A stretch of DNA of 64,000 nt from the NCBI RefSeq assembly GCF_963853765.1, contig NC_088857.1, positions 12,834,001 through 12,898,000 on the forward strand. The letters are read 5' to 3'. The stretch is from Magallana gigas. Its lineage: Eukaryota. The notes under the pieces were generated by a model. The model was given only the letters and a program-made list of their open reading frames with translations. It did not search any database and had not been told where the DNA came from. Positions 1 to 31,400 of this stretch are shown piece after piece. Within the stretch, counting starts at the first letter, position 1. Every line of letters begins with the position of its first letter. The position numbers and the translations under genes were made by a program.

Positions 1-720
1 CCTATCACCAGGGTCACTATATCCATCACTAGAGTTTGTGTGCCCAACAACGGGGTCTGTACACCCTCACCAGGGTCAGTATACCAATCACCCGGGTCTG
101 TACACCCATAACCAGGGTCAGTATACCCATCACCAGGGTCTTCATATCTATCACCAGGATCAGAGTGCGTATCACCAGAGTCTGTACACCCTTAACCAGG
201 GTCAGTATACCCATCACCAGGGTATGTACACCCATAACCAGGGTCAGTATACCCATCACCAGGGTATATACACCCATAACCAGGGTCAGCATACCCATCA
301 CCAGGGTCTCACTACCTATCACCAGGGTCAGAGTACGTATCACCAGAGTCTGTGTGCTCATCACCAGTGTCTGTACATCCGTAGCCAAAGTCAGTATACC
401 CATCACCAGGGTCTCAATACCTATCACCAGGGTCATAATGCCTATCACCATAGTCAGAGTACGTATCACCAGAACTGTAAACATATCACCTGGGTCATTA
501 TACCTTTTAGTAGGGTCAGTGTTCGTAGTACTAGGGTCTGTGTGCCCATTATAATGGTCTGTATATTCATAACAAAGGTCAGTTTACCCTTCACCAGGGT
601 CTTAATACTTTTCACCAGGATAGTGTACGCATCAATAGGGTCTGTGTGCCCATCACCAGGGTCAGTATACCTAACACAACAGTCAGTGCACTTATCATTA
701 GGGTTTGTATATCCATTACC
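1..720 (-). repeat. 21-bp-monomer satellite array, reverse orientation (runs off the window start)
   Basis: Units such as cctatcaccagggtc and cccatcaccagggtc are the reverse complement of the gaccctggtgat(a/g)gg monomer of the downstream array. Polarity flips at about 720-740. Confidence 0.9.
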
Positions 721-734
721 TGAGTCAGGTAATA

Positions 735-7143: not shown

Positions 7144-9255
7144 ATGTCCAACGACGTGGTAGCCACATGGCAGGTGGCCCTACCTGATGGAGTCCATGAC
7201 ATTGAGTTTGAACATGGGACAACATCTGGCAAAAGAGTCATCCGAGTGGACGGAAAGGTATGTTACTTTTATTGAATTCGACAAGTGTTGAAGAATTTTT
7301 TGCATAGTTTGAATATACCTGTTTAACTGTTTTTGTACATTTTGTACCAAACAAAATATTTTAATTTAAAGATATGAACTCCTTTTTCCTGGTGTTTTCT
7401 CTTCAGCTATATCTATTCTGATTTCAGTTGTAGATCTTTTTTTGTTATACTTTTTGATAGCCATGGCCTGAACTTACATATATTGGTTATATACAAAATA
7501 ATGAAATGATATCCAAATTCATAATACCAATATTCAAATGCTATTTATTTCAATCTGTTGTTTTTATAAAACTGGTCTACTGTCAGTAAATAAAACTCTG
7601 TCTGTTATTCAAATTCATAATACCAGTATTCATATGCTATTTATTTCTGTTTTTTTATTTTTTATTAAACTAGTTTATTGTCTTAATAAAACTTTGTCTG
7701 AGCCCCCAACCCAGAAATGATTCATAAATAGCATTTCTAATATGAATCCAATTTTTGTTATATTGTAGGAGATCTATAAGGTAGACTGGATGTTCAAGTT
7801 AGTCGGCAAGGAACACTTTCAGGTAGGCCACAGCAAGGCCAAATGTACAATCACTATAGACGCTGTCAGTGGATTTGCTTATGAATACACACTGGAAGTC
7901 AATGGGAAAAGTTTGAACAAGTTCCGCGAGAACCAGAGCAAAGTTCAGAAGGCGTGGGTTCTGACCATTGCAGGGAACCCCATCAGGGTGTGCTTGGGTG
8001 AGAATATGTTCTTACAGTTTAGAAGGGGTGTTTTTTTGTCTGCTGAAGTTGCATTTACATGTAATAATTTTAACAAACAACTGTTGTTGTCTGACGTATG
8101 TAAACAAATCAGTTTATTTTCATGGCACCTGGTAAAACTACTTCACGTCTCAATTTGGTTTTCGTAAGACAGATTGCAAATAACAGCTCCCATTCATTTA
8201 GGTTTAATAACCCGTAATATATCAGTCATCCTTATTGTTTTTGAGACATAGCAATATTTGTAAACTGAATCTCTTATTGAATATCAGTTTTAAAAAAAAA
8301 GAAAATAAAAACCAAGTAATTAATTCAACAGCATTTATTGGCTGTTTGATTTTACAGTTTATTTATTTATTTATTTATCTTCATACAAAACAGTGCCTTA
8401 CATTTATTATTGTTTTATCAACAGAAAAAGACACACTGGATGTTTGGGTGAATGGAGACAAAGTGGAAACATTTGTAAGTAATTTGATTTTCATTCAATA
8501 TTTAAGAAATCTGCAGCTAGTTATATTGTAAAAATTTAATGAAGAAAATGGTTGATTATGAATAATAATTAAGGAAGTAATGAAAAAATTTACTCATATC
8601 AATGTTCATGGGTTACAGGAAGTGACCTCCTTTTTGGAAATAATATGGTTACAAATCTCTAACCCACAATATTACTACCGTAAGGTTCAGTGGGGGTATA
8701 TATTGTTAAAGACAGATGCAACGTTCCTCAGTTTTATATAATTTTCCTTGATAGATTATTTCTTCTTTATTTGCATTAAAATCTGTTAATGCCCAAAAAC
8801 TCAGGGTGCATTACCAGGCTAATTTCGGAGTTAGAATATTTTGAATTTTTCTTTTAATTGCATACAAAATGCAATTAAATGCTTTTTGGAAAAGTCAAAA
8901 CATGTATTTTCGATTGAAACCATATATCAAAATAAAAAAAAAAATCATGTAACATGAAAATATAAATTTGGCATAACGCAGTGGAAAGCTTCACATTGCG
9001 GAGATAGAAAAAAGAGAAAATTATGGAAGATAGGTCGTGTCTGACCTTAAAGTGAAAGAAGGACTAAGATAAAATCAGGTAGTCTATAATCTTGTTTTAT
9101 TTCAGGGAGAATTTGGGGAAGAAGGAACAGAGACTCATTTCCAGATCGGGGCTCACTCTGCCCACATCACCGCCATTAGCAGTGGGCGGCGGCGTGACGG
9201 AATTCTACATAAACTGTTCGTAGACGACACAGAAATCCCAGAATGCAGCGATTGA
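7144..9255 (+). CDS. FAIM: Fas apoptotic inhibitory molecule 1
   Basis: Exons 7144-7257, 7769-7997, 8425-8474, 9106-9255, all GT-AG and phase-consistent. Translation MSNDVVATWQVALPDGVHDIEFEHGTTSGKRVIRVDGK/EIYKVDWMFKLVGKEHF...GFAYEYTLEVNGKSL.../EKDTLDVWVNGDKVETF/GEFGEEGTETHFQIG...LFVDDTEIPECSD* closely matches FAIM1 as I recall it. Confidence 0.95.
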
Positions 9256-11514
9256 CCTAGCTTATGACCTTATAGAGAAATATGATGCTTTTTAAAGCTG
9301 ATTTATTTTATTTCATTCCAGATTTTCTTTTTCAGGAGAATTTAGATTTGGTTTGATAGTTAGATTTATTTTTTTTTATATACCATTCCGTCCATATACA
9401 CTGTACCCTACACTGTTGTAATGTGACATCAGCATTTTTGTTCGAATATCATTTACTTTTTTTTCGTGATTGCATGCATTTTTCTCAGTCATAATCTAAC
9501 AGTTTTTTCATTATAATTTTATGTATCACTCTCTTTTGTTTTTATGGTGGAATGTATCAAAGTTAATTCTTTCTTATAATGTGAAAACAAAGTTTTACGA
9601 TGGTTTTGTTCCTACAAAAATACCTCCACTTGTAGATTGGTCAGAAGGGTATTCAGCTTCATACTTGTACAATGTACTTTGAAAAATAAGCAACTATTAA
9701 ACAGTTGTATACTGTAGATTCCTAATTAAATACAAGGAATTAATATCCAAGTAAAATTGCGAGAAACACCCCGTACAGATATTAAAATTTCACCTTTTTT
9801 TAAGACAGTTGTAAAGTATATTAAATTATAACAAAATTTTGGTGTTCGCGATTTTATATTCTCGCAATTTGATTCAAAATAGCAGAATTGCAGAATTAGG
9901 TTCTCATGTATAATAAGGAATCTACAGTATTTTATTCCTGTTAGATATGAACCACTTGTTGCAATGAACCTGCGTGCAATTGTGTGACATATCAGAGGCC
10001 AAAACACATGCTAAAAATGCTACAATTACATGTACTACAACAGGTACCTCATGATAATATCCCAGGTGCTGTTTGACCAATCTACACCAATGGCGACATA
10101 GCATTGTGCACCCTAACATGTTTTGAATCTTTTGATTATATTTGTGCCTCATTTTTATGATGTATTTTAGATTTCTTGGGTAGATATTTGCCATATGTAT
10201 GTGTGTACATATCTGTTTATTTTGATATACACATTCAGTGTATTGATTATTTATTTGATAGGATAATACATATTTTGTGAGAACTCGCATATAATTACGG
10301 TAAGAAAAGTAATTTGTCAATAATTTTGATACACAAATATCTGTATAAGCTATAAATTCCAACATTCCAAAATAACCAGATATACTTTAATAGCGAGTAT
10401 GTATGTACATGTACTTTGTATGTATGAACATGTATTTGCTAGACAAAAAGGTTATTTCTGATTCTTTCTTCTGTTCAGAATGATAAGAATGTGCTTATTT
10501 AAAGCTTTTGTGTTTGGTGGTTATAAATAAAGTAGAGAAGCACAATTTTTAGTTGATTAAGTCCTGATTAATAAAAAAATCCACCTTGCCCTATTATGGC
10601 TAATGTGTTAGGACCTGTCAACATTGCTGTGACTTGATCTCAAATTTTTAACTTCCGCTGTATCCATTCATCTTCTAAGCAAGAAAATTTTGTTGTCAAA
10701 TTTTATGTACATGTTTTCATTTATAAAAATTTCTTGCTTTGATGCCCAATTATACTTGAGTAGATCTGCATTTTATTTCAGTCTTGAAAAAATTATTGTA
10801 TTGAATTTTGTATTTCTGTGATCAACAATATTATGCTCATATTAAAATCAGAAAAATACTGTAAATTTATCATATCATTATTTTTGTTTTGGCTGTATAA
10901 TGACAATCTATGAGATTATACCGAAACTGTGCGTATATCCAACCATTTTCTTAGCACTCTGCATGCATGGGTCTGCAGTAACTTTACAATATTATTTGTG
11001 ATATTTATCAATTGAAGGATCTTGTTGTCACATATGTATCTGTGATTCTTAAATGATTTTGTTTGATTTTACAACCCTTTCTATGTAGTTTTTAATGTTT
11101 GAAATAAATATAAAAATAAATTCACTGAAATTTGTCTTCATTTTTATTAAAGGAATAATATATTAATTATTAATTCTGGAATTAATAATGTAAAGTACAG
11201 AGTATTTTTTTAAAGTATTTTTGAAAATAACAAATGCATATAAAAAAAAATACTAAGTGTAGAAAAAGGAAAAGGTAATTAACAAAATTAATGAATTCAA
11301 GAGGAAAACATCCTCTCCCATAATTACCTTTACATAAAATGCACATCAAAAAGTATAGAGATTCAAATGACAAAAAATTGTGAAAATAGTGAAATAATTC
11401 AAAAAGAAGAAAACACAAACATGCACACATACTCTCCCTTTCACTCCCTGTCTGTGAGAATGAGTTTAGATGATATCATGTTTATAAATCACAATAGCAT
11501 TCTTTCAGCTGCTC

Positions 11515-14500
11515 CTACAGATTTGCAACTGTAACATCGGCACACTGGTAAAACTGTGGCGGTGCTTTAGGATTATTGGTATTGTAGGTAACCTACAAAC
11601 AAGCAGTCACAGATGATGTGAATAAATGTTCTGGCATTAAGGAGGCTGAATGGATGGTCAATATACATTACTACACTTCAGATCTGCCTTATCATTTGAG
11701 ACTCATAGATGACTTCCTTAGCCATCAAGACAAAATCCAAAAAAATTCTCTTTAAAATTTGAAAAGTATCTATACCGGTATCTTTATACACTGTACAGAG
11801 CTCTACTTTTTAAGGAGATTGCAATTGATAAACGATGTACTAGTCTAAAAATGATCATCCATCCAGTCCTTGTAACAAAAACTGTATTAAATCTTAAGGT
11901 AATATTGAATTGTCATTTATTTGCATTCTTATGAATAAAGTATGAATATATAAACACAAAGTACATGTTTCTCTATTGATACTGCACAATTTTTAATTGA
12001 AAATAACTTTGGATTAACTCATCCATGGTACATGAATGAGTGTAAATATAAAATCTCTCACCTGAATGGCATAGTTTCCTTTTACCATCCTACAAAACAT
12101 TCAGAAAAATTGTGTATTGAATTCCTGAATTTAATCTAAACTTGTGGTAAACCGAACTTGGTCTTAACTTGGTCTATAGATATGCATGTAAAATTATGTA
12201 CATTTATGTTTATGCATTACACCAATATGTAATCTGGTAGGATAAAATTAATGTAATGATTAGTGAAAATTTCTACTTACGGAATCTTAACCTGAGCAGT
12301 ATAGAGAGTCAACGATTTTTCTCCTTCATCTGGTATGGTGGTTAGCAGCTGAAATTTCTCACCCGCAACACTCCCAAAGGCAACAGTAAAGTTTCCCTGT
12401 ACAAAAAAAAAAAAAAAAGTAGTATATTAAGGTCAGACGACACGTTCCTCAATTTTAGATAACTTTTTCCAGGAATTTGTTAATGGTTTACTACTACTTT
12501 GACAAGCTTTCTTGCAAAAAATAAGGGTACCTTACTAGGCATTTCTGCAAAATACTATAGTATGCAATTTTCTATATAATCTTCTTGAAAATACACTTGA
12601 ATTGCTGATATAAAAATAAATACATATACAGTACAGCGAAATTCACTAAATTAGAACTATATCTCCGCCGGGGCTGGGATTTGAACTCACGACCTCTAGA
12701 ACATATACGCCTTTGGCAGTGAGTGACCACGTATCTAACCACTCGACCATGTACACATATAACCAAATTCAAGTAAATTTTGATCATTTTTAAAGTAATT
12801 ATAAAATTAATATTTCTTATTGGAACTCTTTATTACAAGGAGATACAAAAAAGATTCATGAGGAACGTGTCGTCTGACCTTAATTGCTTAAATGTTTCAT
12901 TATTTGTTTCATACTTGTACAGAATAATAACTAACAAACTGTATAACAATAAATACATGTACGTACAGGTGATGCGCTCAGAAAATGATCCAAATTTTTC
13001 TGGAAAGTAACACTCAGCATTNNNNNNNNNNNNNNNNNNNNNNNNNNNNNNNNNNNNNNNNNNNNNNNNNNNNNNNNNNNNNNNNNNNNNNNNNNNNNNN
13101 NNNNNNNNNNNNNNNNNNNNNNNNNNNNNNNNNNNNNNNNNNNNNNNNNNNNNNNNNNNNNTTAATAATAACTGTTAACATTAAAATGAAACTTCATTAA
13201 TAGAAAATCATTTAATAACATAAGCTAGTCTGACTCTAGATTGTGTATTTTAACTGGTCTGATGAAAGACTTTTTCCTCAAAGGAATATGTAAAATTCCC
13301 ATACTATCCTAACCCAAAAGATTATTAAGATCATAAATATGTGGATATAAAACTGTATAATAGCTACAGAGTTGGAAATTCACCAAAAATAGCAGCCAGC
13401 CACAGGGCTGGCTACGTTAAAAAGTTACCAGCCCTGCCCAAAATCTGCCAGTCCTGATAAAAATGTTCATTATTATGAATGAACTATACATAAAGCTTAA
13501 TATTTACATCTGTAACACAGGCCCCTCGAAATCTTTAACTTTCAAGTATTTGAAACCATATCTAACCCAAACCAAAAGAATGCTTATTATTAAGTTTAAC
13601 ATGCTTAAAAAATGAAACTATTCACCTACATATATATATAATTATAAACCCTCTTTTAGAAGCAAGCTAACAATGTCATAATCATGAACTTTCTAAACAA
13701 TTTGAAAGATTGACAATAATATGATATCAAACATTGAAAGGGGTTAAATTAAAACAACTGTAAATAATTGTGATAAAAATTTATTTATTCGGTCAGATGC
13801 ACTCCTTTTAACTGCAAATTGTGTTTTGGTCTCACAACACTATTTTTCTGTAGGTTCAAAATATGGTCAAAACAAAATAATTCCAGATTTCTCGTTTGTT
13901 TTGAGGGGTTTTCCGCTAGTGACAGGGCTGTATTTTCAATGAGATAAAAACGGTTAAAACGCATAATTTTTCCGCTTTTGTAAAAATACGAGGTAACTTG
14001 ATTTTCTTACGCCAATTACTTGCACAGGGGATGAAAATGCTTGTACTTGGTTTTCAACCACATGAGTAACTTCGATGTCTCCGAGTAAACTCTTGTGTCT
14101 TTGTGTTTATTTGTTACTAAATCGTTTATGAATTTTTGTTTTAAAAGTTGTAAAGGGAGATTTCGCCAGAAGATTGTTTAAAATCAACTACCCACATCTA
14201 AATACGCGTGACTTTGGTCAGAATATATCGTAAAAAATAATAGTGGTGTACAACCTATCCACCCTCGACATTGTTTACATTATTATAGAGCTTCCCATGT
14301 GTTTCCTAACTTATCAGCCATACATTCTACTTTCCATCCCGGAACTGTACATCGGCGTCTTTTGTTTTGGTTGTATACTTTTTTTCCTTTAGCGTCAATC
14401 AAGGAACGCTTTTGGGGAATCGACAAACTCAAAAACTTGCGCATCATCTAGCATGTTGCTTCTATTGCAATAGGGCCGAACAAAATTGTATTGTGAACAC

Positions 14501-15326
14501 TGGTTGGCTATAACAATCATTCAGACCAATGAGCGAATAGATTACAACTTGTAGAGCATACCTAATTCTCAACGAAACCTAACAACCGACATTGTCTGTA
14601 CTTTTTGTTAATGAGGTAAATAACTTAAAAATAAAATTGTCGGTTTTAAACTAGGAACTGGCTATTAAAATTAGCCCGACCGCCGGGCTGTCTTTTGAAG
14701 TTTCGCCCCCGCCCGCCTAAGAAACAGACCGTCTCGGGCGGTCGGGCGGGCTCTTATTTCCAACCCTGTAGCTAACTTGCTACATGTGTATTTCTGTGTA
14801 TATAACAAATCAGAAATAAAGTTTATAACAAAACACCAGAAACTAAAATCAAGACTAGTTTTGACCACCAACGAAAGCATTAATTGTTTTAAAGTACTTC
14901 TCGTTACAACCATCAGCCTAACTCCTCCCTTCATCATCCTAGTTGCAGGCAACAGGATGAGGAGTTGATAAATTTAATTATACTGAGACCTCAAGTTGAT
15001 GATGTCCAAGCACACACAAACCTTATGATGACATTGTCTTTACTTGCTGGTAGTTTTCCACAGGGACCCTTAATTTGGAAGCAGTTGTCATTTCCTGAAG
15101 ACAAAAAAGATCAATTAACTGAGATTCACACTGACATATCATAGGCGTCGGAACCGGGGGGGGCTAGGGGGGGCTTAGCCCCCCCACTTTTTTTGCAAAG
15201 TTATACCTAACCATTAGAAACATAGCATGATAGAGGGTTCAGCCCCCCCACTTTTTCTCGGAGGAAAGACTATTGTTCCTAAATTTACCTTGAAAGATTG
15301 AGAGGTTAGATTCAGAAGCATACTAG

Positions 15327-15359
<33 letters not shown>

Positions 15360-15430
15360 ATTAGGAATTTCATGATTTTGAGAAAAAAATTTTGGTAAGT
15401 AAATTTTTTTTTTTGGAAGTATAGGTATAC

Positions 15431-15461
<31 letters not shown>

Positions 15462-15935
15462 ACGGATTAGGATTTCCATGATTTTGGGAATTACTTTTTT
15501 CTCAATATTTCTGAGGATTAGTCTAGCCCCCCCACTTTCAATTTGCTTCCGACGCCTATGCATATAGGTAATTGTTAATATTAATGGGAAGGGGGGGCCC
15601 TCTATATCTAGATCCGCGCATGTACGTACCGTCTCTCATGCGATTCAATTATTTTACCTGTAATATATTTTACAGTTTTTTTTTTATATATACGCCTTAT
15701 GCGGTGTAGACTATAATACAGAGCTATCGAGTAGAATGCAGCATGAACATGTGATCACACTGTCAACTGTTTCGTAATCGCATTTTTTTTTTTTTAAACA
15801 TAAATGTATCATACCTTGTTTGTTAATTCCTGCAAGAGAGCCTCTTTGAATAGGACTTATCAGACAGAGATGTGCATGACATGCCTCCAGCAACACAAAA
15901 AACCCCAAAACGCTAACTGCAATTGCTCGCGACAT
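11515..15935 (-). CDS. Secreted small protein with LPMO-like histidine-brace features (uncharacterised)
   Basis: Exons 15935-15815, 15094-15022, (start in gap)13021-12967, 12396-12281, 12089-12062, 11592-11515, all with canonical sites and compatible phases. Signal peptide MSRAIAVSVLGFFVLLEACHA is followed by HLCLISPIQRGS...GPCG...TFQKNLDHF...QFYQCADVTVANL*. The gene model is well supported, while the functional label is inference. Confidence 0.75.
12431..12879 (-). mobile_element. Non-autonomous TIR element, TTAA-flanked (Kolobok-like), with internal tRNA-like cassette
   Basis: TIRs ggtcagacgacacgttcctc / gaggaacgtgtcgtctgacc. TTAA at 12427-12430 and 12880-12883. A second copy lies in inverted orientation at 22706-23150. 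Confidence 0.85.
13022..13161. other. Assembly gap (140 N)
   Basis: Run of N. It hides the acceptor and possibly the first codons of exon 3 of the LPMO-like gene. Confidence 1.
13367..14768. mobile_element. Non-autonomous TIR element (hAT-like CAG(A/G)GTTGG termini)
   Basis: cagagttggaaat at 13367 and atttccaaccctg ending at 14768, with tagcta on both flanks. No transposase ORF seen. Confidence 0.5.
15140..15560. mobile_element. MITE with poly-G/poly-C subterminal tracts
   Basis: TIRs cataggcgtcggaa / ttccgacgcctatg. 5-bp flank duplication catat. Internal repeats of agccccccc. Confidence 0.8.
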
Positions 15936-17441
15936 GTTAATGATATTTCCCTGTCCTGAAAAAAATAATCACGTGACTATCACATGAGTCAGGGTTCAGC
16001 ACAGGGAAAAAGATCGTTTTATAAATTACATGTATACGTTTTGGTAATCATGGACAGTTTTATTTGAATTAAAAATTTAAACATGAAGCAAAAAACAAAA
16101 ACAAAACAAAAACGAAACCATTCGTCTCTCTAAACAACTGAAGATTAATACATGATTGTATCTTTATAGAAACAAGCATCATCTGCAAACTATACATACA
16201 GAATATATAGGCCTATATACATTATATAGATGAAACCAGAAAGAATAGCATGTACTGTAGACCAGCTATGTATAAATGTTCAAAATCTTTGGCTACATGG
16301 AATATACATGCATGTACGTCACTGAAGCACACATGGGGCAGACATATCCGAACATCTTGACCCCCCCCCCCCCCCCAAAAAAAAAAAATTACAGAAACAA
16401 GTGCATGTGCACCTAGACGAACGACTTCTTCTTTTTAGCTCACCTGAGCTGAAACACACCCATCATACGGCTCTTCAGAACGCGGAGCAGTTTTAGTTGA
16501 CACGGAAAGCTGAGGTATCGACTCAAACTCGCTCATAAAATGTTTTTAAATTGAAATTTCGTTTAGGACTAAAACATAAAGGGATGATTAAGCTTTCAAA
16601 GTACAAAATTGTTTGTTGATAATATTATATTCTTTGATTTTTGAGATATATGATAGAAACATGTATTTATATATAAGTAACATGGCATTTCCCGTTTCGA
16701 TCCCGGTCCTCGGCCTAATACCAGTACCAAGAGTATTAATGTAATGTATACACAATCATTATACAATTTGAAAAAAAAACCTTTTTGATCAAGATTTGAT
16801 GCTTAAAAGATGATACAAAAAAATACAAATACAAATTATTAAATGTTTGCTGTATTAGAAATGACATATTTTTTAATCAAGAAAGCTTAACTTTATTAAA
16901 ATTTAGTCCATTGTTAGGCTATACTTCTTCAATTTACTTTAGAGATAGGCGTTTTCAGCAGTTTTTATTGAATCTGTTTTCTTTTTTTTCTTTTTTTTTG
17001 GGGGGGGGGGGGGGGTAAGAATTTGGATTAAATTAGAGTCGACCTGACAACATGCCCAGCAAAGTTCCTACTGCGGAATTGCAACTCCATATCATTGTTC
17101 TAAATTCTGATATTATTGTTAGTATTGGATAAGTAACATGTTACTTTACTATTATCACTCGATGTATACAGTATGACATGTATATTGCATAATCACTTGG
17201 CGCATACTATACTTCATCTTTATTGTCATCATTGCATATTAATTAAGATACATTTGTAATTGAATATGTGTACTGACGCAAAATTTAATGCAATTATTAT
17301 TTGAAGCAAAAATTCAACAAAGTCATTGGTTGAGTGCCAGTGATAAGAAAGGGGTGAAAATTAGGACTTGAAAGCACAGCACCTTGCCCCTTGGTTATAA
17401 AAGATAAGACAGCGACTTTAGTGAGTCACATTAAGGCAGAC

Positions 17442-20400
17442 ATGAATCTCGGTGCTTTGGTTGTTTTGGTGAGTCTCTCTCTCACGAGCGCCTCGACCAC
17501 GATTTCCATCGTTGGAAAGTCGGGCCTGAAACTGAGCATACCCGGTAATTACAACATCCTGAATTAATCGGAAAATTCGACATTGTTTGGCTTTTTCTTT
17601 TAAATTTCATATGCTTACAAATAAAAAGAAAGAGTTGCACAATGATATGCCTTGTTTCAGACGACGATGGCATTTCTCTCGTGATTTTTAGCGTTAGGAA
17701 CCAGAATGGAGAATCTAGAGATTACGTGGTTGAGACCAAGAACAAAGGTAATCCGAAAGAAATCCATGTCTAAATCTAAACTCGATGTAATGTGATAAAA
17801 ATAACAAAAAACTGTCTAATCACATATAATTTGCTGATATATTTGTATAATTTTGACTTTGTTGTTTCGCAATGGATTTGAACCAGAGTCCGACAGTTGG
17901 GAGTACGTAGACACCGAAGCCAACGCTGGACCAGGAGATGAAGTAGAGTACAAGGTAGCCACGGTGCAGAACGGACTGTTAGTTGAATCCAAATGGACGT
18001 CAGGTATATTGCAAAACTATATAACTTATCACATCATAGTTGTTATTGATGGTCACATGACCTTTTTGACTTGCCTAGTCTGTACGAGCAAAAGTTCACT
18101 ACTGGTATCACACAGTATAGGTTCATAACTCTTGAAGAATCGGTCATCGCTCGGACTTTTCCGTCAAGTCTCGACGGAAATGACCAAGCAATGTTCAAAT
18201 TATGCTAACATATTAAAGCATAGGTAGCCCACCGTTAGTTTCGTCCTTAATATCACTTGATTGGTCATTTCTATTATTAACCTAACCATTACAATGCAAA
18301 AACAAAAATGATACGGCATTGTAAATCACGAAAAATGACCCCCTAGGTCTCAAGAATCATAAAAGACACTGTATGAATTGTTCCGTGATTCAGGTACTTT
18401 TTTTCGTATTTCAGTTTTCTTAGTGAAGTATTTCGAACCAGGACAGTTTCGCAGTCTTCGACAGACTGTGGTTTTCCGGGACGATTTTAACCACTTCAAT
18501 AAAGGTCACTTCACAACGGAAGTGAGCGCCTGGGGCGGAGGGGTGAGATATTGTATACTTATTCTATGCCCGATTTTATTAGCATATTTTATGTTGTGAA
18601 GTACACTTGGCTTAGGCTCTACGAGATACAATAAACTAATAGTTTTAACTATAAAACTGCTGTTAACCCTGGACGTATGATCTGTGGAAGATATATAATT
18701 AAAAAACCACACACAAAAAACTGAGATCTGAAAAATTGGTGACTTTTCATATTAGTAAATAAATATATTTTGGACATTGATGTGTATAAACAAATTATAA
18801 ATATAAAAGAAAAAGTGCCGGATTGGTGAACTTGGGGCAGAGTATGGTAAATGCCAACTCGATTAACCTGTGAAGGGACCCCCCCTCCCTCCACCCGGTC
18901 AAGGCTTTCCAAAGTTTTAAGATTGCGATATTTCTACGAATACAGAATGGTGAATTCCAAGTGTACACCCCCGAGACTGCTAATTTATACACAGCTAATG
19001 GCTACTTATACCTTAAACCTGTAAGTATCATGTTACTTTTCTGTGAATTTGTTTTTAAATTGGCACCATTATATATTTCAGAATTGAAAACAATTCATAC
19101 ACTAATATTTATTTATTATGAGGTAAAACTCTTCCTATAGTATATATTTAGTTTATTTTGTTTGTATTTCATATTTATTTTATTTTATTTTTTGTAATGG
19201 TTTTTTGATGGTAAACATTTTCTCTGTGCGTGATATATATTTGCGACGACGTACGTGACTGAATAATTCTGCCTAATGTTAAACAACAAAACAACAAAAA
19301 GTGAATATAACTATTAGTGAAAACCTTTCAAATGTTCAGAAGTTTTACCATTTGTTGAGACATTTAACAAAATATCTTTACAGACACTAACAGTTGACCA
19401 CCATTCCTTCAACGAAGGGACGCTATACAACGGCAATATGGATGTCCGCGGTCTGTTTGTAGACAGAAACAAATTCTCATTTAAACTTTTTACAGTAAAT
19501 ATCACATGATTAAACAACAATTTTTCATTGGCATCATCAATTTATTCAGGAATATGGCACACCTGTACAAATGGCGTTAACAACGGGTGTCGTAAGTCAG
19601 CATACGGCCAGGAGATTCTTCCTCCAATCATGTCCGGAAAAGTTACCACGCACGCAGCCATTACATATGGAAGAGTCAACGTTAGAGCTAGGGTTCCTAA
19701 AGGGGCGTTTATATGGCCAGGTTTGTTTCATGAAGTAAAAGAACCGCTGTAAAAACTAATATATTCGAGTTTTATGGGTTTTTTTCTTTGAAATATATCG
19801 CCGTTTTATTTCCCCTTAGCTATTTGGCTGTTGCCGCGTGACAACCATTACGGGAACTGGCCTCGTTCTGGAGAAATAGATCTTATGGAGACAAAAGGTA
19901 TGGACACTGCGCTAGCATACTTCTTTCATTTGTTTTTTTTTAACAGAAAGGGGGTTCATTACATGCAAATAAGTTCGAAATTTTAAGACACTCTTTGAAT
20001 CTTTATAGGAAACGCCTGGACCAGTGAGTATGGAGGCGATCACGGGATCCGCTCCATTGGTTCCACACTTCACTGGGGACCAGATGCCGGACACAACTGT
20101 TTCCAAAAAACTCACGGTGAAAAGTAAGCCACAAAAAACTAGTAGAACATAATTGGTGGTTTCACATAATTAGTTCCATATATATCACCTTAGTGACACA
20201 TTTATAAAGTTGCAATCCCGTTTAAGAGCTTATCCTTGGGAAAAAGCATCGAGACAAAACGACAGAAGCAAAGGTTTCCAACCATAAGCGCATAGGTTTG
20301 CAACGGAATATTAATTCTCAAGTCTAAAAGTTTACTACTAGTATCTTATGTCTCCATCAACAATATTCAATGTTGTAATTGCCATATTATCGCAAAAAGA

Positions 20401-21831
20401 CAGGCCTCCAATTTCTATACCTTAGGCCACAAACATCAAAAGCAAAGGTTCTTTAAAATTGGTATGACAGATGTTACCAACCACCATAGTATTCAATTTC
20501 CGACAACAAGTTAGAAGAGCGTAGATCTCGTATACTCTCATTGTTTAGGACATCAGCTGCAATATAGCATAGATCCCCTGTAGTATCATGGTTTCCAAAC
20601 AAAGCCGCAATTACAAGAAACTTCAGCAATGGCGGATGCCATCACTAACACTTATGGAGTATAGGAAGGTCTCCAATCGTTGTTTTCTTTAAGCAGTAGC
20701 TTGGATCTCAATTGACTATAGAGTAGATTTTCAACAGCATTAATTCCAGTGCAATCTATATATATATTAATAAAAGTTTTGATAAATTTCCTTAGTTTCC
20801 CTTTCAACACGTTAAACAGTTAACAAACAGAACATCCTTAAAATGAATAATCTTTTAAGGTACCTGAACCAGCCCGATGGATGGCACGGATGGCATACCT
20901 ATTCTCTGGACTGGACCAAGGATCACCTAAGGTTAGAATAGCTATAACAAACAACAACAACTTCGTAAACACGCCATATTTCTAGAAAAAAAAAACGACT
21001 AGACGGAATATCAAGCTCTATTGTTTCTTACTTCAGCATTTTAGTCGACAACCAAGAGATATACAGACTGACCACCCCCGGGAATGGGATGTACAACTAT
21101 TGCCCCTACCATAACATAGAGGACCCCTGGAGAAACGGTCCACATAATGCACCATTCGATCAACCAGTAAAGTATCATTTTGTCTGATGATGCTTCAATT
21201 CATTAATTGGTTTCATTAGATATCATTTTTAAACAAGACATTTCTCAGGGATCATTTTTAAACAAGACATTTCTCAGGGATTTATTTAAAATATTAATAC
21301 ATTATCAAACTCGTTTGTCAACAAATTTTCTTCTTTTAACGATATAATTCATTTCATTGGATCATTTTGTCACGATAGTGAAGTGCAATCGTCGTTTTTT
21401 TATTCGGTCAAAAATTTTTATGATCTTTAGACTGTTAAACCAAATATTATTATACTTTTTGCGATTTTTTGCTATGTTTGACAAAATGATTCGCGAAATT
21501 TACTTTAAAGATAAACTTAAGACATTAAATAACTTTTTCGCGGCAAGGCGACGATGTTTGGCGACCTCGCGAAGTTTTCACTTCCACGAAAAAAGTTGGT
21601 TTTACAGACTTCTTTATTTTCCTACTACAGTTCCATCTGCTTCTGAACGTGGCAGTGGGAGGAACCAGCGGTTTCTTTGCCGAGGGGCAGTACGATGTGC
21701 CCAAGTCCTGGCGTAACGACTCGCCCCACCCCATGAGGGACTTCTGGGAGCACAGAGGGGAGTGGCTGAAGACCTGGCACGGGGACGATGTGGCCATGTT
21801 GATTGATTACGTAGAAATGATCCAGTATTAA
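17442..21831 (+). CDS. Beta-1,3-glucanase / LGBP-type protein: signal peptide + CBM39-like domain + GH16 catalytic domain (about 444 aa)
   Basis: Exons 17442-17544, 17661-17747, 17887-18003, 18424(or 18415)-18542, 18946-19020, 19384-19450, 19550-19720, 19820-19897, 20009-20123, 20860-20931, 21037-21166, 21631-21831, total 1335 nt and in frame. Motifs: GLKLSIPDDDGISLV (betaGRP N-domain-like), SAWGGGNGEFQVY, ILPPIMSGK, WPAIWLLP, WPRSGEIDLME (ExDxxE intact), APFDQPFHLLLNVAVGG. TATAAAA lies about 45 bp upstream. Confidence 0.93.
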
Positions 21832-24200: not shown

Positions 24201-26677
24201 ATGATACCGTCTCTTGTTCTTGTTTTTCTAGTAGTCTTCTCATCGGCTCTTCCGGAGACCGAGAGTAAGCATACGTTTTTCTTTAGTTGTTTTTTTTTGG
24301 GCATACATGATATCCGTTGAGGATCTACCAATGTAAAATTTGTTTAGGATTTTTTCTGCACTAATTATTGACAATGATTAATTTTCGATATATGGTCATT
24401 CACTCTATGATTATCGTCGTACATGTATATTATTTTTTACCAGGTTGTCACGTGGGCTGGATACAGTTTCAAGAAAAATGTTATTTTTTCAGCCACACAA
24501 CGGCCACTTGGTTCGATGCAGGAGTAAGTACTAGGAGGGGCATGGTCACGATTTTGCTCTAATTCTATTTTTCAATGCTTTAGGAAAGCATTTTTAATGG
24601 TTAAATGAAATTTAAGAGTCAGTTGCAGAGTTATTTATAAGCAAGATACAGGGCTCTCAGTATTCTTTAACATGTAAACAAGGCTCGTACTCTGTTTTTG
24701 CTTACAAAGGTTCAATATACCAGTAAAAAATCGTTTTCAAGCTGATTTGTCTATCTTCTTATTCATTTAAAGCATAAATAAACAATATCTAACGTTTAAA
24801 AAACATTCATTTTAAGTTTAAAACTGGAATTTTCACTTCAACATTTCAAATGTAAACAAAAGCTTTAAAAAACTCAACAACTGACAATCAAATCTTGATT
24901 GCCTATTTAAAAAATGCTTTACTGAGGCATTGTGAACATTAAAATCGGAAAAATAAATTTTGACCAAAATCATGACCATGCCCCTTTAAGATTTTTTTAC
25001 GCAACAGCGTGAGACGATTACGTCTTAAAATCCTCCAAACAAAAAGTTTCTCAAACAAACCTTAATTAGAATTTTTTGGGACGAAAGTATGGTATTCTAG
25101 CATGATTTTTTCAAAAACAATTTAAAATATGAATAGAGAAGATTTTTTGGGAGAAAATCAAAACTTTCAAAATATTTGTGCGATACAAGTATAAAACAAA
25201 AGTACCAGTAAATGCTGACTCGAATTCTGGATCTGCAGGTCAGTCATCTGAGGTAAGATGTTCTGCGCTTCTCTTAGATTATGATCTAATCTCTGTTAAT
25301 TGTGATGAACCGTCAAAAAATAAAAGTCATGTGGTGTGAAGGACCGTTGTTTGAAAACCGAAGTGACATGTAACAATACACATTATTGGAGCAACATGCA
25401 GAACAAAATCTATAACAAATTCCATATAAATATGTAGATATATCGTGAATCTTATGATTTTTATCTAGTAAAAAATTGTTTTTTGTTCAAATGATAAAAA
25501 AAGTATTCTTTATTTGCGCTGATAGTGTGAAGTTATTACTTTTTGATTTCCTTCCCGTTCAAATACGTCAAGTGCAGATTTAACATGCTAAAGTTAATAG
25601 TGATTTATAAACAATATGAGTAAAATATTACAAGTATTGTAAAGACGAAAAAATACAAATCAGAGTTTGTTTCTTAAGTCAAATGTATACGATACTGTTT
25701 GAAAAATAAGTTACAATTTCCTTTTATTCCATTATAATAGTCATAGAAAAAAAAATATACGATGGAAGTTTTCTTGAGTTTGCTTTTTGCAGAGCGCGTG
25801 TTCACAGTTCCACTCAAAGCTGGCTGAACCACGATCTGACGCTGAAATATCTTTCTTAAGAAGCCATAGCCAGTCCCAAAGTAAAAGAGCTTTCAAATTG
25901 ATTTTGTGTTGAACAACAGTTCAAAGTAGTTTATATCCAGTTTATGTTTTTAGTCATAAATTTGAATGTATTTTATGTATTCATAAACGTTATTAAAGCA
26001 CAAAAAATCCAGAGCAAATAATTATGGAATGATTTATACTTGTATGTACGGATTTTATTTATCTTTTTTTTTTCTATTTAAAGATGACTTGATTTAGGTG
26101 ACAAATCAGACTCATATTATTGCTTTTTAAAAAATATTTTATTGAAACTCTTATGTAGAATGGAGTTTGGGTAGTAATAGTATAAACTTTCTCTACAGAA
26201 TTTTCATATTTTGCGAAAAAAGTGGGAGGCACAGTTTGTTAAAATCTATATTTTTACATATAATAAAAAAAAAACCTAGCCCCTGGTGCATTAAGCTGAA
26301 ACATGTTTTGAAGGGAGCGATTTCTTTAAACTTCATTGTATTATTTTTGCTGGTCATTTAAATAGATAAGAATATGTGGATCGGGGTGTCGGACATTATA
26401 GAAGAGGATCGCTGGGTGTATTCCTCCACACAAGAGGTAGTTCCACACAATGATTTCAATCCTGGGGAGCCAGGCGGTCACCTAAGTCAGAACTGTGTCG
26501 CCCTTTGGAAGGATCACCACGGAAAATGGGCGGATCATGGTTGTTCTGAAAAGGAATATTACATCTGTGAAGAAGTTATGACGTAAGTAAAGATCAAGCA
26601 AATCTTTGTATTGTGTAGAATTGTGCTATTAACTTTGATTCTCTTGTAGGTCTGATCCAGTCAATGTCATTGGTTGA
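24201..26677 (+). CDS. Secreted single-CRD C-type lectin (perlucin-like), paralog 1
   Basis: Exons 24201-24264, 24444-24523, 25793-25880, 26366-26582, 26650-26677. Translation MIPSLVLVFLVVFSSALPETE-SCHVGWIQFQEKCYFFS...MWIGVSDI...EPGGHLSQNCVALW...WADHGC...YICE...SDPVNVIG*. Confidence 0.92.
24536..24985 (+). mobile_element. Kolobok-like MITE in lectin-1 intron 2
   Basis: TIRs aggggcatggtcacgattttg / caaaatcatgaccatgcccct, with ttaa on the right flank. A 3'-truncated relative lies at about 55245-55565. Confidence 0.75.
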
Positions 26678-28464: not shown

Positions 28465-31400
28465 ATGAGATCGCCTCTTGCTCTTCTATTCTTCCTTTCA
28501 TTTGCTATCCTGGAGACTGAGGGTAAGGTTTTCGTATTATATATATCCATTAATTAACATTCTACGAATACATTTTTTGGGGGGAAATACTTTGACAATT
28601 CGTTGACAATAAATAATTTTCAATAATTATACACTGAATAATAGTCGTTATATATTATTTTTGACCAGGTTGTCACGTGGGCTGGATACAGTTTCAGGAC
28701 AAATGTTATTTTTTCAGCCACACCACGGCCACTTGGTTCGATGCAGGAGTAAGTACTGCAAGTTTCATGTATATTTTTGTTTTGCTTTGCTTGTTTGTTT
28801 TTTAAGGTTTATATTCGGTTGATGTTTGCATTAAGGAGTCTCCACACCTTTGCGAAAATTTTTCTCATACAATCAATTAAATCTGAGTGTTGTTGCTTGT
28901 TGAATATCCATTATATATTAAAACGTCCTATTATTCGAATACAATTACTCAAAGAAATACATTTTTATCGAATTTTCTATTTTCAGAGCACGTGTTTACT
29001 GTTCCACGCAAAGCTGGCTGAACCACGATCTTACGATGAAATAAATTTCTTACGAAGCCATAGCCAGTCTTTAAGTAACATGACCCTTATTTTGTGTTAA
29101 AGAACAGTTCAAAGATTTCATATCCAATGCGTAATGAAGAAAGAAAACGCTCGTAAAAAGCATTGAAAAATTACGGTAAATATACATGTATGCGATTAGA
29201 GCCCCGCTCTGTGGGCGCCATGTAGTGGCCGTTCTTTACTTCAGTCCTTCTCTCTGTCCGTCTATCTGTCTGTCCGTCTGACATTACTTGTCCGGACAAT
29301 ACTTTCTCTCCCTTTAGCAAAATCTGGTTCATACTTTACCCAGAGAGTCTCTTTGAGTAAAGGATGTGCTTGGTAGTTCTTCCACAAAAAGCGTTTGCAA
29401 TACACTGCAGTTTACAGTGAATCATGTTTTAGGTCAAATGTCAAATTCATTTCAGAACTCTTTGAACAAATCTTGTCCTGACTTTATCTTATTTACCCTT
29501 CTTCCGATCTTACCATGTTTCACATAAATTATATTTGTGTAACGTGTGTCCAGCCGAGTGGTTGCTATTATGTATGTGGACACGTACCCGGTTACACCCG
29601 TGATTCTGCAGAACACGTTATTATAAACTGTCCTGTTAGCTTTCAGTCTAGTAACACACTGAATCAATATATTTACGCTGATTATTTTAATAAATTTACT
29701 TAATCAAGATATTTACGACGATTGGTACTTAAATCAAATGTTAATTTCACAGGGATTTACCTAAGCCCAAATCAAATCAACCACAAGTCTCCCCTTGTTT
29801 ATTTAAAACCAATGTCCCTGACCACTTGCCCGGGCTATCAAACTACCCCCTGACCCATGCCCTCAGACATTTGGCCTTACCAAGGGTTCTGGCTACTGAC
29901 CCGAGGTCTCTAACCAGTTGATTTCCCCAGCTCCCTTTCACACTGGTGTTCAGGCTTAGTCAGCCTTTATTGCCAAGTGTCAAAGCTACGGTGGTTGGTC
30001 AACTGGCACAACCTATACTATATGGCATTCTTCAGCCCTACGTAGCCTTTAATCTAATAATGCCTATTCAGCCCTACTATATAGCCTTCACTTACTCTAC
30101 GCTCCTAAAGATGTTCCCAGTCTGGCTGCAGTGATCTGTCGACTACCGCTGTTTATATAGCTTCGGCACATTCCATCTTTACCTCAAAGGGGGAACAGGC
30201 TATTACCATGGAAATACCCTGTACTACCCTATTTTCTGTTATTGGTATGACCTGATTCGTCACATCACCCACCCATTAAAGTCATACGCCCCGTATGAAA
30301 ACAACTACTTTTTCCCATTTTACTAAGCTGCAAACAAATAAGGACCTAAGAATATCTTTCTATAAATCCAGTTCTTACATATTCATTAGGACATTTAAAA
30401 TGTACAATTATTCACAAAAGTTTTTTTTTCTCGATCTTCTTGATCTGTCTTCCATCTTCTATCCATTTGGTGATGATCTTGACACTTTCAGTAAAGTACA
30501 GTAGATCATTTTGGCGCTCTTTGTCTTCAAAGGAAGGTCTGTCCGCGGCTGGCTCACAAGGCAGAGAGACAAAGCTAGTCGCAGCTTTCACTGGAGCACT
30601 TACCGACAACGGCCTAGTTGGCTTGCGGTAGATTCTACCTTCTTCGAGCAGCAACTCTTTTGAAATCATGGATTTCTTCTTGCTCCTCGCTTCAGCCGAT
30701 CGCGAGTCATCATTATCACCATCACTTATATCCTCTTGTAGTAGGCTTTGGAGGTCCCCGGGGTCCTGTCTGACCCAAGAATCTGCATCTGACTCATTGC
30801 CGTCACACTCAGATTCAGCCCATCTGCCTCGCCACTGTTTTCTTCACCAATGTCATGTTGCCTCTTGAGGTGCCTTCTCAGATTCTTGGGAGTGGTGGAA
30901 CTAAAATCTCAATAGTTACAAAATTAGAGATTCTGGCTACAATTACCGATGTGTTTTGCTAATTCGTCATCTCTATTGAACCGGTAAGGACAGAATGGAC
31001 ATTTCCTGTCTTTTTTCAACATAATCTTCGTCTTTGGCATTGCAACCTAAAAAAACAATGCAGATGTAAAACTATCTTTCTAATAACAACAGCTATCAAC
31101 AATACAGATTTCTAAATGTTTAGCTAATTCTATTTCTAAACTAAATTAATCTCTAATAAAATCTGACATCCACGTAGGAGGACGTCTTTCCCTTTTCGAA
31201 GGACCAAGCGAACGCTCATCATTTTGACACTGTTGTCCTAAAGTCGACTCTGACAATTGGTCGCCAATCTGATTATTCTCACTATCAAAATCATCTACAA
31301 CATCAGGTTCTTTCAGTTCCACGATGTCTTCCGGACTTTCGTGCTCAACTTACTCATCCAGCTGACTGGACTCTTCCCTTAATAATTGGGGATGTTTAAG

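What the first reader, a model, noticed from the sequence alone, without database searches (positions are those of the whole stretch)
15935..17442. LPMO-like gene and beta-1,3-glucanase are head-to-head across only 1.5 kb: possible co-regulated oxidative + hydrolytic glycan module
Seen: divergent ATGs at 15935 (-) and 17442 (+). Each has a TATAAAA-like box (about 16017-16023 on minus, about 17395-17401 on plus) and a nearby TGAGTCA AP-1-type site (15985-15991, 17422-17428). There is also TCACGTGA at 15969-15976 and AGATAAG at 17402. Two C-type lectins follow immediately downstream. Inference: LPMO + GH pairing is a microbial and fungal strategy for polysaccharide breakdown. A linked LPMO-like / GH16 / lectin block could be a digestive-gland or innate-immune unit acting on algal, fungal or oomycete beta-glucan walls.
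Basis: inference. Interest (0 to 1): 0.7.

Follow-up and report, generated by a model that had tools for sequence, protein, structure and literature searches.

The report
Oyster glucanase beside copper-protein gene
Two real oyster genes, a beta-1,3-glucanase and a small LPMO-like copper protein, sit back to back here and in two other oyster genera, but each has its own promoter with its own conserved control motifs, so this looks like ordinary neighbouring genes, not a shown co-regulated sugar-degrading unit.

Summary
Observation confirmed. The two divergent ATGs (15935 -, 17442 +) and every cited motif are at the stated places.

The plus gene is a GH16 beta-1,3-glucanase with an intact catalytic motif (GEIDLME). 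Two C-type lectin paralogues follow it.

The minus gene is a six-exon, roughly 160-aa secreted histidine-brace protein. It meets Pfam's BIM1-like/X325 threshold through its 95% identical spliced relative. Its fold matches AA15, AA10 and X325 about equally, so "LPMO-like" is fair and catalysis is unknown.

The "co-regulated module" reading is not supported:
- The head-to-head order is kept in Crassostrea virginica and Ostrea edulis, but with spacers of 5.3 and 9.3 kb instead of 1.5 kb.
- The unrelated neighbour FAIM1 is kept as well.
- No GH16 lies within 10 kb in Saccostrea, two scallops or Lottia.
- The shared AP-1 sites are not conserved on either side.
- The conserved motifs differ: TATA plus GATA for GH16, tandem TCAYGTGA E-boxes for the copper protein.
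- About 44% of the spacer is a MITE-like insert, and the spacer is transcriptionally silent.
- GH16 RNA is roughly 8-12 times more abundant in two runs. That is too few runs to test correlation.

An earlier scan note (s1-375666) covers the copper-protein gene itself.

The parts
11515..15935 (-). CDS span of the BIM1-like / LPMO-like secreted histidine-brace protein gene. It has six exons: e1 15935-15815, e2 15094-15022, e3 (start hidden in the N run)-13021..12967, e4 12396-12281, e5 12089-12062, e6 11592-11515 including the stop. The 3'UTR reaches at least 11270.
   Evidence: Introns 15814-15095 and 12280-12090 are seen as CT..AC joints in RNA reads. All exon borders match the spliced transcript contig L011 and protein P0013. 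P0013 scores 30 bits on PF20238 against a cutoff of 27.
13022..13161 (.). N run that hides the acceptor and the first few codons of exon 3 of the BIM1-like gene. It was left unfilled.
15969..15987 (-). Tandem T-flanked class-B E-boxes. On the + strand they read TCACGTGA (15969-76) and TCACATGA (15980-87), 11 bp start to start and about 35-52 bp upstream of the BIM1-like ATG. This is the only conserved promoter block of that gene.
   Evidence: Conserved in L003, L004, L005 (O. edulis) and L006 (C. virginica). Saccostrea keeps one CACGTG box. Both scallops have an inverted CATGTG pair.
15985..15991 (+). AP-1-type TGAGTCA on the BIM1-like side, overlapping the distal E-box.
   Evidence: Present in the window. 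Absent at the aligned place in L003, L004, L005, L006 and L007.
16017..16023 (-). TATAAAA box 82-88 bp upstream of the BIM1-like ATG.
   Evidence: Kept only in the close relative L003, not in C. virginica, O. edulis or Saccostrea.
16355..17020 (.). MITE-like insert that fills about 44% of the spacer. Its terminal inverted repeats are C16A12 and T9G16.
   Evidence: 43-nt arms, 84% complementary. No RNA cover apart from a trace at 16330-16529.
17341..17408 (+). GH16 proximal promoter: a GATA site at 17341-17348, TATAAAA at 17396-17402 and AGATAAG at 17402-17408.
   Evidence: TATAAAAGATAAG is identical in C. virginica. In O. edulis the TATA sits at the same distance and GATA sites lie at -82 to -96.
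17422..17428 (+). AP-1-type TGAGTCA on the GH16 side.
   Evidence: Present in the window. Not conserved in C. virginica or O. edulis.
17442..21831 (+). GH16 beta-1,3-glucanase / beta-glucan-binding-protein-type gene of about 11 exons. The catalytic exon lies at about 19822-19902 (WPRSGEIDLME).
   Evidence: The catalytic exon matches beta-1,3(4)-glucanase 7wwc at E 2e-7 with the E-I-D-x-M-E motif kept; another exon matches GH16 laminarinases. Nine exons match the C. virginica gene in L006, whose 448-aa product carries PF00722. The first three match the O. edulis gene in L005, where CBM39 hits weakly.
24368..26586 (+). C-type lectin gene 1 (open frames 24368-24562 and 26374-26586).
   Evidence: Pfam Lectin_C 37.5 bits against a cutoff of 22.6 on the last exon.
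28653..36088 (+). C-type lectin gene 2, a paralogue of gene 1 (exon matches at 28653-28784 and 35879-36088).
   Evidence: 80% and 73% identity to the two exons of lectin 1 by tblastn.
7126..9258 (+). FAIM1 orthologue, tail to tail with the BIM1-like gene. It is the other conserved neighbour.
   Evidence: tblastx against the C. virginica FAIM1 gene region shows 88-92% identical exon blocks. FAIM1 holds the same position in three oysters.

Best explanation
These are two unrelated secreted-protein genes that happen to be divergent neighbours in a block of gene order (FAIM1 / BIM1-like / GH16) inherited within oysters. Each is driven by its own proximal promoter.

The GH16 gene has a TATA box about 45 bp before its ATG and conserved GATA sites. 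I infer a gut or digestive-gland type of control from these. It encodes a catalytically competent beta-1,3-glucanase / beta-glucan-binding-type protein.

The other gene encodes a secreted histidine-brace protein of about 138 aa once matured. It has the LPMO fold and belongs to the BIM1-like/X325 family by Pfam. Its only conserved promoter element is a pair of TCAYGTGA E-boxes, from which I infer control by a bHLH-ZIP factor of the MiT/TFE or USF type.

The 1.5-kb spacer is not a shared bidirectional promoter. Nearly half of it is a transposon-like insert, it is transcriptionally silent, and its length is free to vary between species.

Shown: gene models, family assignments, synteny, motif conservation. 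Inferred: which transcription factors act, the tissues of expression, and copper binding.
For: Gene identities.

Separate promoters:
- The two TATA boxes lie about 1.37 kb apart.
- The GH16 side keeps TATAAAAGATAAG and an upstream GATA site across genera.
- The BIM1-like side keeps the tandem E-boxes from Crassostrea to Ostrea, and a related pair in scallops.
- Neither conserved motif set occurs on the other gene's side.

Spacer:
- blastn finds nothing conserved in its interior between genera.
- 16355-17020 is a MITE-like element.
- RNA depth over 15930-17329 is about zero in the stranded polyA runs.

Synteny:
- The divergent GH16 lies 5.3 kb away in C. virginica. In O. edulis it lies 9.3 kb away, with a 578-aa ORF in between.
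- FAIM1 is conserved on the other side.
- No GH16 lies within 10 kb in Saccostrea, Pecten, Argopecten or Lottia.

Copy number: only one of at least 5 GH16 loci in this genome sits beside the single-copy BIM1-like gene.

Expression: one contig run (X2) holds GH16 at k-mer depth 1145 and nothing on any BIM1-like exon.
Against: - The divergent orientation has survived in three oyster genera even though the spacer turns over, which is also what a functional pairing would predict.
- In the two raw-read runs both genes are higher in X22 than in X21. GH16 bin depth goes from 6.5 to 28.3. BIM1-like exon bins go from 0-0.95 to 0.6-2.8. The ratio is therefore similar in both, about 8-12 to 1 after correcting for the exon share of each bin.
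- Both AP-1 heptamers close to both ATGs are unlikely by chance, about 6e-5 uncorrected.
- GATA and MiT/TFE factors could both be active in digestive cells, so different motifs do not exclude co-expression.
- TSS positions were not measured. Many GH16 reads have their left end at 17441, which I could not explain.
Confidence: 0.68

Rival explanations
1. The pair, with the two lectins, is a co-regulated oxidative plus hydrolytic unit. The histidine-brace protein would act as an LPMO on beta-glucan, or another wall polysaccharide of algae, fungi or oomycetes. GH16 would hydrolyse the loosened chains. Both would be switched on together through shared AP-1-type sites.
For: - The head-to-head order is conserved in three oyster genera.
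- The fold matches catalytic LPMOs, with the N-terminal His aligned to residue 1 of the mature chains. The best match is AA15 5msz: Z 12.6, rmsd 2.9, 128 residues aligned.
- 6 of 17 family members also touch Pfam LPMO_10.
- Both genes rise together from X21 to X22.
- AP-1 heptamers lie near both ATGs.
Against: - The AP-1 sites are not conserved on either side, not even in the close relative L003.
- The conserved promoter motifs differ between the two genes.
- The spacer is 1.5, 5.3 and 9.3 kb in the three species.
- There is no linkage in scallops, limpet or Saccostrea within 10 kb.
- The only Pfam model passed is BIM1-like/X325. LPMO_10 scores 14.6 bits against a cutoff of 23.
- X325/Bim1 proteins are tied to copper transport, and convincing LPMO-type activity has not been shown for them (PMC10952591).
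- From my own knowledge, no LPMO family acting on beta-1,3-glucan is known.
- Run X2 has very high GH16 and no BIM1-like contigs.
Confidence: 0.1
2. The two genes have separate core promoters but sit in one chromatin neighbourhood. They share a tissue, for example digestive-gland cells, so they are loosely co-expressed without any biochemical cooperation.
For: - The abundance ratio is similar in the two polyA runs.
- The conserved neighbourhood within oysters includes FAIM1.
- GATA motifs and MiT/TFE-type E-boxes are both plausible in endodermal, lysosome-rich digestive cells. This is inference from general knowledge of those factor families.
Against: - Only two informative runs, both from one study.
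- Run X2 shows GH16 without BIM1-like.
- No conserved distal element was found in the spacer.
- The tissue of origin of the runs is unknown to me.
Confidence: 0.2

Closest known systems
Fungal X325 / Bim1 (Cbi1) LPMO-like copper proteins (Pfam PF20238; LaX325, PDB 6IBH/6IBI)
   Same: - Secreted, with His as the first residue after the signal peptide.
- An invariant second His (FQKNLDH), and a small LPMO-type beta-sandwich.
- Pfam score above the curated cutoff for the 95% identical spliced relative (30 against 27 bits) and hits for 16 of 17 family members.
- VIA Z 11.1 to LaX325, with residue 28 of the model aligned to residue 1 of the chain.
   Different: - The family is animal (molluscs and a hemichordate), not fungal.
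- There is no C-terminal extension or GPI-type tail; the protein ends three residues after the last strand.
- A profile of the animal family does not reach LaX325 by sequence in the PDB.
- The Asp that caps the copper in X325 could not be mapped.
Catalytic LPMOs of animals and bacteria (AA15 Thermobia domestica 5MSZ; AA10 such as CBP21; viral fusolin)
   Same: - The best structural match is AA15 (Z 12.6, 24% identity over 128 residues), and AA10, AA13 and AA16 lie within about 1.5 Z of it.
- The C-terminal motif FYQCADV aligns with FYNCADV of fusolin.
   Different: - The mature protein is about 138 aa, against 166-233 residues for most catalytic LPMO chains listed.
- Pfam LPMO_10 is below threshold, 14.6 against 23 bits.
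- Activity and substrate are unknown.
Invertebrate GH16 beta-1,3-glucanases and LGBP/betaGBP pattern-recognition proteins (e.g. oyster CgbetaGBP-1 and -2, scallop CfLGBP)
   Same: - An N-terminal beta-glucan-binding-like region followed by a GH16 domain, in a protein of about 440-450 aa.
- The glucanase motif is present.
- Oyster betaGBPs are described in review PMC5877582.
   Different: I could not tell which named oyster betaGBP, if any, this locus is. The genome has at least 5 GH16 loci. The catalytic Glu-Asp-Glu motif is intact, so it may be a digestive enzyme rather than a pure sensor, or both.
Bidirectional (shared) promoters of divergent gene pairs
   Same: Head-to-head orientation, conserved in three genera.
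   Different: - The start codons are 1,506 bp apart and the two TATA boxes about 1.37 kb apart.
- The spacing is not conserved (5.3 and 9.3 kb elsewhere).
- The interior is a transposon-like insert and there are no shared conserved elements.

Membership tests
BIM1-like / X325 (PF20238) | Score above Pfam's gathering cutoff | tested here: met
   P0013, the spliced protein 94.8% identical to the visible mature part of the window's protein, scores 30 bits against a cutoff of 27, E 8e-7. 16 of 17 family members hit. The window's last exon alone gives 14.6 bits. The window's own spliced protein has no reference, so it was not scanned whole.
BIM1-like / X325 (PF20238) | Histidine brace: His as the first mature residue plus a second conserved His | tested here: met
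   The signal-like N-terminus ends ...EACHA|HLCL. His28 of the model aligns with residue 1 of mature LPMO and X325 chains. His86 in FQKNLDH is invariant in 17 sequences. The cleavage site and the geometry are inferred, not measured.
BIM1-like / X325 (PF20238) | Asp carboxylate occupying the fourth equatorial copper position (the X325 hallmark, PMC10952591) | tested here: inconclusive
   D115 and D159 are invariant and D85 nearly so.
BIM1-like / X325 (PF20238) | GPI anchor or C-terminal tail, as in fungal Bim1 | tested here: not met
   The protein ends ...QCADVTVANL*, three residues after the last strand.
Catalytic LPMO (AA15/AA10 type) | LPMO fold with the N-terminal His at the start of the domain | tested here: met
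   VIA Z 12.6 for AA15 5msz (rmsd 2.9, 128 aligned) and Z 10-11 for AA10, AA13 and AA16. Unrelated beta-sandwiches score Z 9-10. Foldseek E is 1.6e-6 or weaker, TM about 0.55.
Catalytic LPMO (AA15/AA10 type) | Family-level sequence membership (Pfam LPMO_10) | tested here: not met
   14.6 bits against a cutoff of 23. 6 of 17 members hit at E up to 0.01; best 8e-5.
Catalytic LPMO (AA15/AA10 type) | Copper-dependent oxidative cleavage of a polysaccharide | not testable with these tools
   Needs recombinant protein and product analysis.
GH16 beta-1,3-glucanase | Catalytic E-x-D-x-x-E motif | tested here: met
   WPRSGEIDLME at about 19860-19890 aligns with WPKSGEIDIME of beta-1,3(4)-glucanase 7wwc, E 2.1e-7.
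GH16 beta-1,3-glucanase | Pfam GH16 domain | tested here: met
   The 448-aa gene products at the syntenic place in C. virginica and O. edulis carry PF00722. The window's exons are 50-100% identical to them. Single window exons alone gave no Pfam hit at E 0.1.
GH16 beta-1,3-glucanase | N-terminal CBM39 beta-glucan-binding module (LGBP/betaGRP architecture) | tested here: inconclusive
   CBM39 is only a weak precomputed hit in the O. edulis orthologue. The window's exons gave nothing in Pfam or the PDB.
Shared bidirectional promoter | Divergent starts within about 1 kb, in one regulatory region | tested here: not met
   The ATGs are 1,506 bp apart and the TATA boxes sit at 16017-23 and 17396-402. 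A 666-bp MITE-like insert lies between them. TSSs were not measured.
Shared bidirectional promoter | Conserved close spacing and shared conserved elements | tested here: not met
   The spacers are 5.3 kb and 9.3 kb in two other genera. Only ATG-proximal blocks are conserved, and they differ between the two sides.
Shared bidirectional promoter | Correlated expression | tested here: inconclusive
   Two raw-read runs move in the same direction. One contig run has GH16 only.
C-type lectin | Pfam Lectin_C above cutoff | tested here: met
   37.5 bits against 22.6 for 26374-26586. The second gene is 73-80% identical in both exons.

The most novel reading that the evidence does not exclude
Within oysters the divergent pairing is kept because the histidine-brace protein really cooperates with the GH16 enzyme and the downstream lectins on microbial or algal wall glycans. 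It could do so as an unrecognised animal LPMO family, or as the copper or redox partner of such chemistry. That would make this the first animal oxidative-plus-hydrolytic glycan locus.
Probability: 0.07. Interest if true: 0.7.

Novelty: new member of a known kind. Interest (0 to 1): 0.27.

Why it matters
As a gene pair it matters little. Divergent neighbours with separate promoters are common, and nothing here shows joint control.

Two by-products may be useful:
- The copper-protein gene belongs to an uncharacterised animal branch of the LPMO/X325 fold, found in molluscs and a hemichordate. I found no paper on it.
- Its promoter carries E-boxes that are conserved from oysters to scallops. That gives a concrete and cheap regulatory hypothesis (MiT/TFE or USF control), clearly distinct from the TATA-plus-GATA promoter of the glucanase.

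Oysters handle very large amounts of copper, so a secreted copper-binding role would be of physiological interest. That belongs to the neighbouring finding (s1-375666) rather than to this one.

Tried and rejected
- My first guesses for exon 3 of the minus gene, at about 14020-14100 in two frames, were wrong. The spliced relative places exon 3 at 13021-12967, with its start inside the N run.
- Pfam on single exons gave nothing for GH16. For the minus gene it gave only a sub-threshold BIM1-like hit.
- The one representative-library search, run with exon 4 (38 aa), returned only genomic ORF fragments (P0009, P0010) and unrelated repeat proteins (P0008, P0011, P0012). I regard the latter as chance or beta-sandwich noise.
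- The first homologue search, with the 85-aa open frame around exon 1, found only unspliced read-through ORFs. Using one of them (P0001) with the region option then reached the spliced protein P0013.
- The first 258 bases of transcript contig L011 do not match the window, and the join is not at a splice site. I treat it as a chimeric or foreign 5' end, not as an alternative first exon.
- The 64 unmatched bases at the start of the X2 contig upstream of 17304 were not found anywhere in the window. So there is no evidence for an upstream GH16 exon in the spacer.
- A PDB sequence search with the N-terminal GH16 exon gave only spurious repeat-protein hits.
- Filamin hits to P0013 (E 0.01) are generic Ig-sandwich similarity.
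- Searching papers for the orthologues' LOC numbers found nothing.
- The Ruditapes orthologue could not be located on a contig.
- The window's own spliced proteins were never submitted whole because they have no reference. P0013 and the orthologues stood in for them.


Full report
**What the window is**

RNA and DNA runs that hold this stretch are labelled oyster. The closest annotated relatives of its genes are from Ostrea edulis, Crassostrea virginica and Saccostrea. The genome has 564 Mb in 29 contigs, and the window is C5:12,834,001-12,898,000.

**Observation**

- The minus-strand ATG is at 15935 and the plus-strand ATG at 17442.
- TCACGTGA is at 15969-76 and TGAGTCA at 15985-91.
- The minus-strand TATAAAA is at 16023-16017 and the plus-strand TATAAAA at 17396-17402.
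- AGATAAG is at 17402-08 and the second TGAGTCA at 17422-28.

None of these words is enriched in the window as a whole. Two AP-1 heptamers within 60 bp of both start codons is unlikely by chance. My estimate is about 6e-5 before allowing for the number of motifs a reader might notice.

**The plus gene**

The open frames from 17442 to 21831 form about 11 exons.
- The exon at about 19822-19902 reads IWLLPRDNHYGNWPRSGEIDLMETKG. It matches a solved beta-1,3(4)-glucanase at E 2e-7 with the E-I-D-x-M-E catalytic motif intact.
- The preceding exon matches GH16 laminarinases.
- Nine of the exons find their counterparts (66-100% identity) in the gene at the syntenic place in C. virginica. The first three exons match the part of the O. 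edulis gene that I could fetch (50-60%). The 448-aa products of both genes carry Pfam GH16, and the O. edulis one also has a weak CBM39 hit.

So this is a GH16 beta-1,3-glucanase / betaGBP-type gene with catalytic residues in place. The genome has at least five GH16 loci, three of them clustered 21 Mb away.

Two C-type lectin paralogues follow on the same strand, at 24368-26586 and 28653-36088.

**The minus gene**

Exon 1 (15935-15815) encodes a signal-like peptide followed directly by HLCLISPIQRGS. RNA reads confirm the intron 15814-15095 and a later intron 12280-12090, both with GT..AG ends on the minus strand.

A two-step search reached a spliced 165-aa protein, P0013. It is 94.8% identical to the visible mature part of the window's product. 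It and its transcript contig fix the six exons.

The start of exon 3 lies inside the N run 13022-13161. I left it unfilled.

Family evidence:
- P0013 passes Pfam's BIM1-like/X325 model at 30 bits against a cutoff of 27. It stays below the LPMO_10 cutoff, 14.6 against 23.
- 16 of 17 collected relatives hit BIM1-like and 6 also touch LPMO_10.
- The family includes oysters, scallops, a clam, the limpet Lottia and the hemichordate Ptychodera.
- The alignment keeps the FQKNLDH histidine, PCG, IPD and FYQCADV, plus four cysteines. The first His is present in all full-length members but one.
- An AlphaFold model (pLDDT 84, pTM 0.79) matches LPMO-fold structures, with model residue 28 on residue 1 of the mature chains. 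AA15 scores Z 12.6, AA13 11.3, AA10 about 11, LaX325 11.1 and AA16 11.0.

"LPMO-like" is therefore right at fold level. The only curated family it passes is X325/Bim1. Members of that family are linked to copper transport rather than polysaccharide cleavage (PMC10952591). Whether the animal branch is catalytic cannot be decided here. I found no paper on it. The gene is single-copy by its exon 4. An earlier scan note reports another compact histidine-brace protein elsewhere in this genome; I did not check it.

**Is the pair one regulatory unit?**

Five tests were possible.

1. Synteny.
   - With 10-kb flanks, the divergent GH16 neighbour is present in C. virginica, 5.3 kb away.
   - It is present in O. 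edulis, 9.3 kb away, with a 578-aa ORF in between.
   - FAIM1 lies on the other side in all three oysters and in the window.
   - No GH16 exon lies within 10 kb in Saccostrea, Pecten, Argopecten or Lottia.
   - The order is therefore an oyster-level block that includes an unrelated gene, and close spacing is not maintained.

2. Spacer content.
   - Between genera only the exons and the ATG-proximal promoter blocks are conserved: about 50 bp on the BIM1-like side by blastn, and up to about 110 bp on the GH16 side in the alignment.
   - Positions 16355-17020 are a MITE-like insert with C16A12 / T9G16 inverted ends.

3. Motif conservation.
   - The AP-1 heptamers are absent at the aligned positions in every other species, and even in the close relative L003 on the BIM1-like side.
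   - On the GH16 side, TATAAAAGATAAG and an upstream GATA site are conserved.
   - On the other side, a pair of TCAYGTGA E-boxes 11 bp apart is conserved in Crassostrea and Ostrea. Saccostrea keeps one CACGTG, and both scallops have an inverted CATGTG pair.
   - The two promoters thus keep different elements.

4. Transcription.
   - In two stranded polyA runs the spacer is silent.
   - GH16 exon 1 has bin depth 6.5 and 28.3. BIM1-like exon bins have 0-0.95 and 0.6-2.8. After correcting for the exon share of each bin, that is roughly 8-12 to 1 in both runs.
   - One contig run holds GH16 at k-mer depth 1145 and nothing on BIM1-like exons.
   - This is too little to test correlation. It neither proves nor excludes co-expression.

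5. Copy number. Only one of at least five GH16 genes is next to the copper-protein gene.

**Conclusion**

The best reading (0.68) is two independently promoted neighbours inside conserved oyster microsynteny. A looser co-expression through a shared tissue or chromatin domain remains possible (0.2). The functional oxidative-plus-hydrolytic module remains a long shot (0.1, or 0.07 in its strong form).

**Unexplained**

- Many GH16 reads have their left end exactly at 17441, one base before the ATG: 12 against a depth of 29 beside it in one run and 5 against 6 in the other. A few reads, and the X2 contig, run further upstream. This may be clipping at a polymorphic stretch or a start-site cluster. 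I could not lay reads again.
- Minus-strand RNA at exon-like depth also covers 13330-14530, inside intron 2.

**Limits**

- The window's spliced proteins could not be submitted whole, so P0013 and the orthologues served as proxies.
- The transcription-factor assignments are inference from motif type only.

Noticed in passing
window 15969-15987; L005, L006, L007, L008 and L010 just upstream of position 10001: The BIM1-like promoter keeps a pair of T-flanked class-B E-boxes (TCATGTGA and TCACGTGA, 11 bp apart) in Crassostrea and Ostrea. Saccostrea has one CACGTG. Both scallops have an inverted pair, GTCACATG..CATGTGAC. Lottia has none. This points to control by a bHLH-ZIP factor (MiT/TFE or USF type) that is far older than the oyster-only linkage to GH16.
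   Followed up: partly
window 15946-15960 and 15995-16009: A 15-nt inverted repeat, 93% complementary, brackets the E-box pair and the AP-1 site. It is also present in the close relative L003 and not in C. virginica.
   Followed up: no
window 16355-17020, 15130-15729 and 12330-12929: MITE-like elements with long C/G and A/T runs at their ends. The two intronic ones draw very heavy RNA reads on both strands, with opposite-strand joints, so they are repeats expressed elsewhere in the genome.
   Followed up: partly
window 13022-13161: The N run covers the acceptor and the first few codons of exon 3 of the BIM1-like gene, so the window's own gene model is incomplete there.
   Followed up: yes
window 17441: A pile-up of left ends of GH16 RNA molecules one base before the start codon, while a minority of reads and one contig extend to at least 17304, upstream of the TATA box. 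It could be a start-site cluster, clipping at a polymorphism, or something else.
   Followed up: no
window 13330-14770: Minus-strand RNA, and contigs from an oyster metatranscriptome run carrying many differences, cover part of intron 2 of the BIM1-like gene at depths similar to its exons. This could be a repeat, retained intron or separate transcript.
   Followed up: no
window 1-6000: A GC-rich (46-52%) tandem repeat is open in several frames on the minus strand for hundreds of codons (for example QGQYTHHQGLHTYHQ... and ITRVSIPITRV...). It lies upstream of the FAIM1 orthologue. It was not studied.
   Followed up: no
G000:C5:34126655-34166544 and C3:39046456: Further GH16 loci in the same genome. 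Three are clustered on the same chromosome 21 Mb away (one with two in-frame TGA), and there is a more distant copy on C3.
   Followed up: no
L005 5332-7569: In Ostrea edulis a 578-aa ORF without any Pfam family sits between the GH16 and BIM1-like genes. It may be a mobile-element gene that widened the spacer.
   Followed up: no
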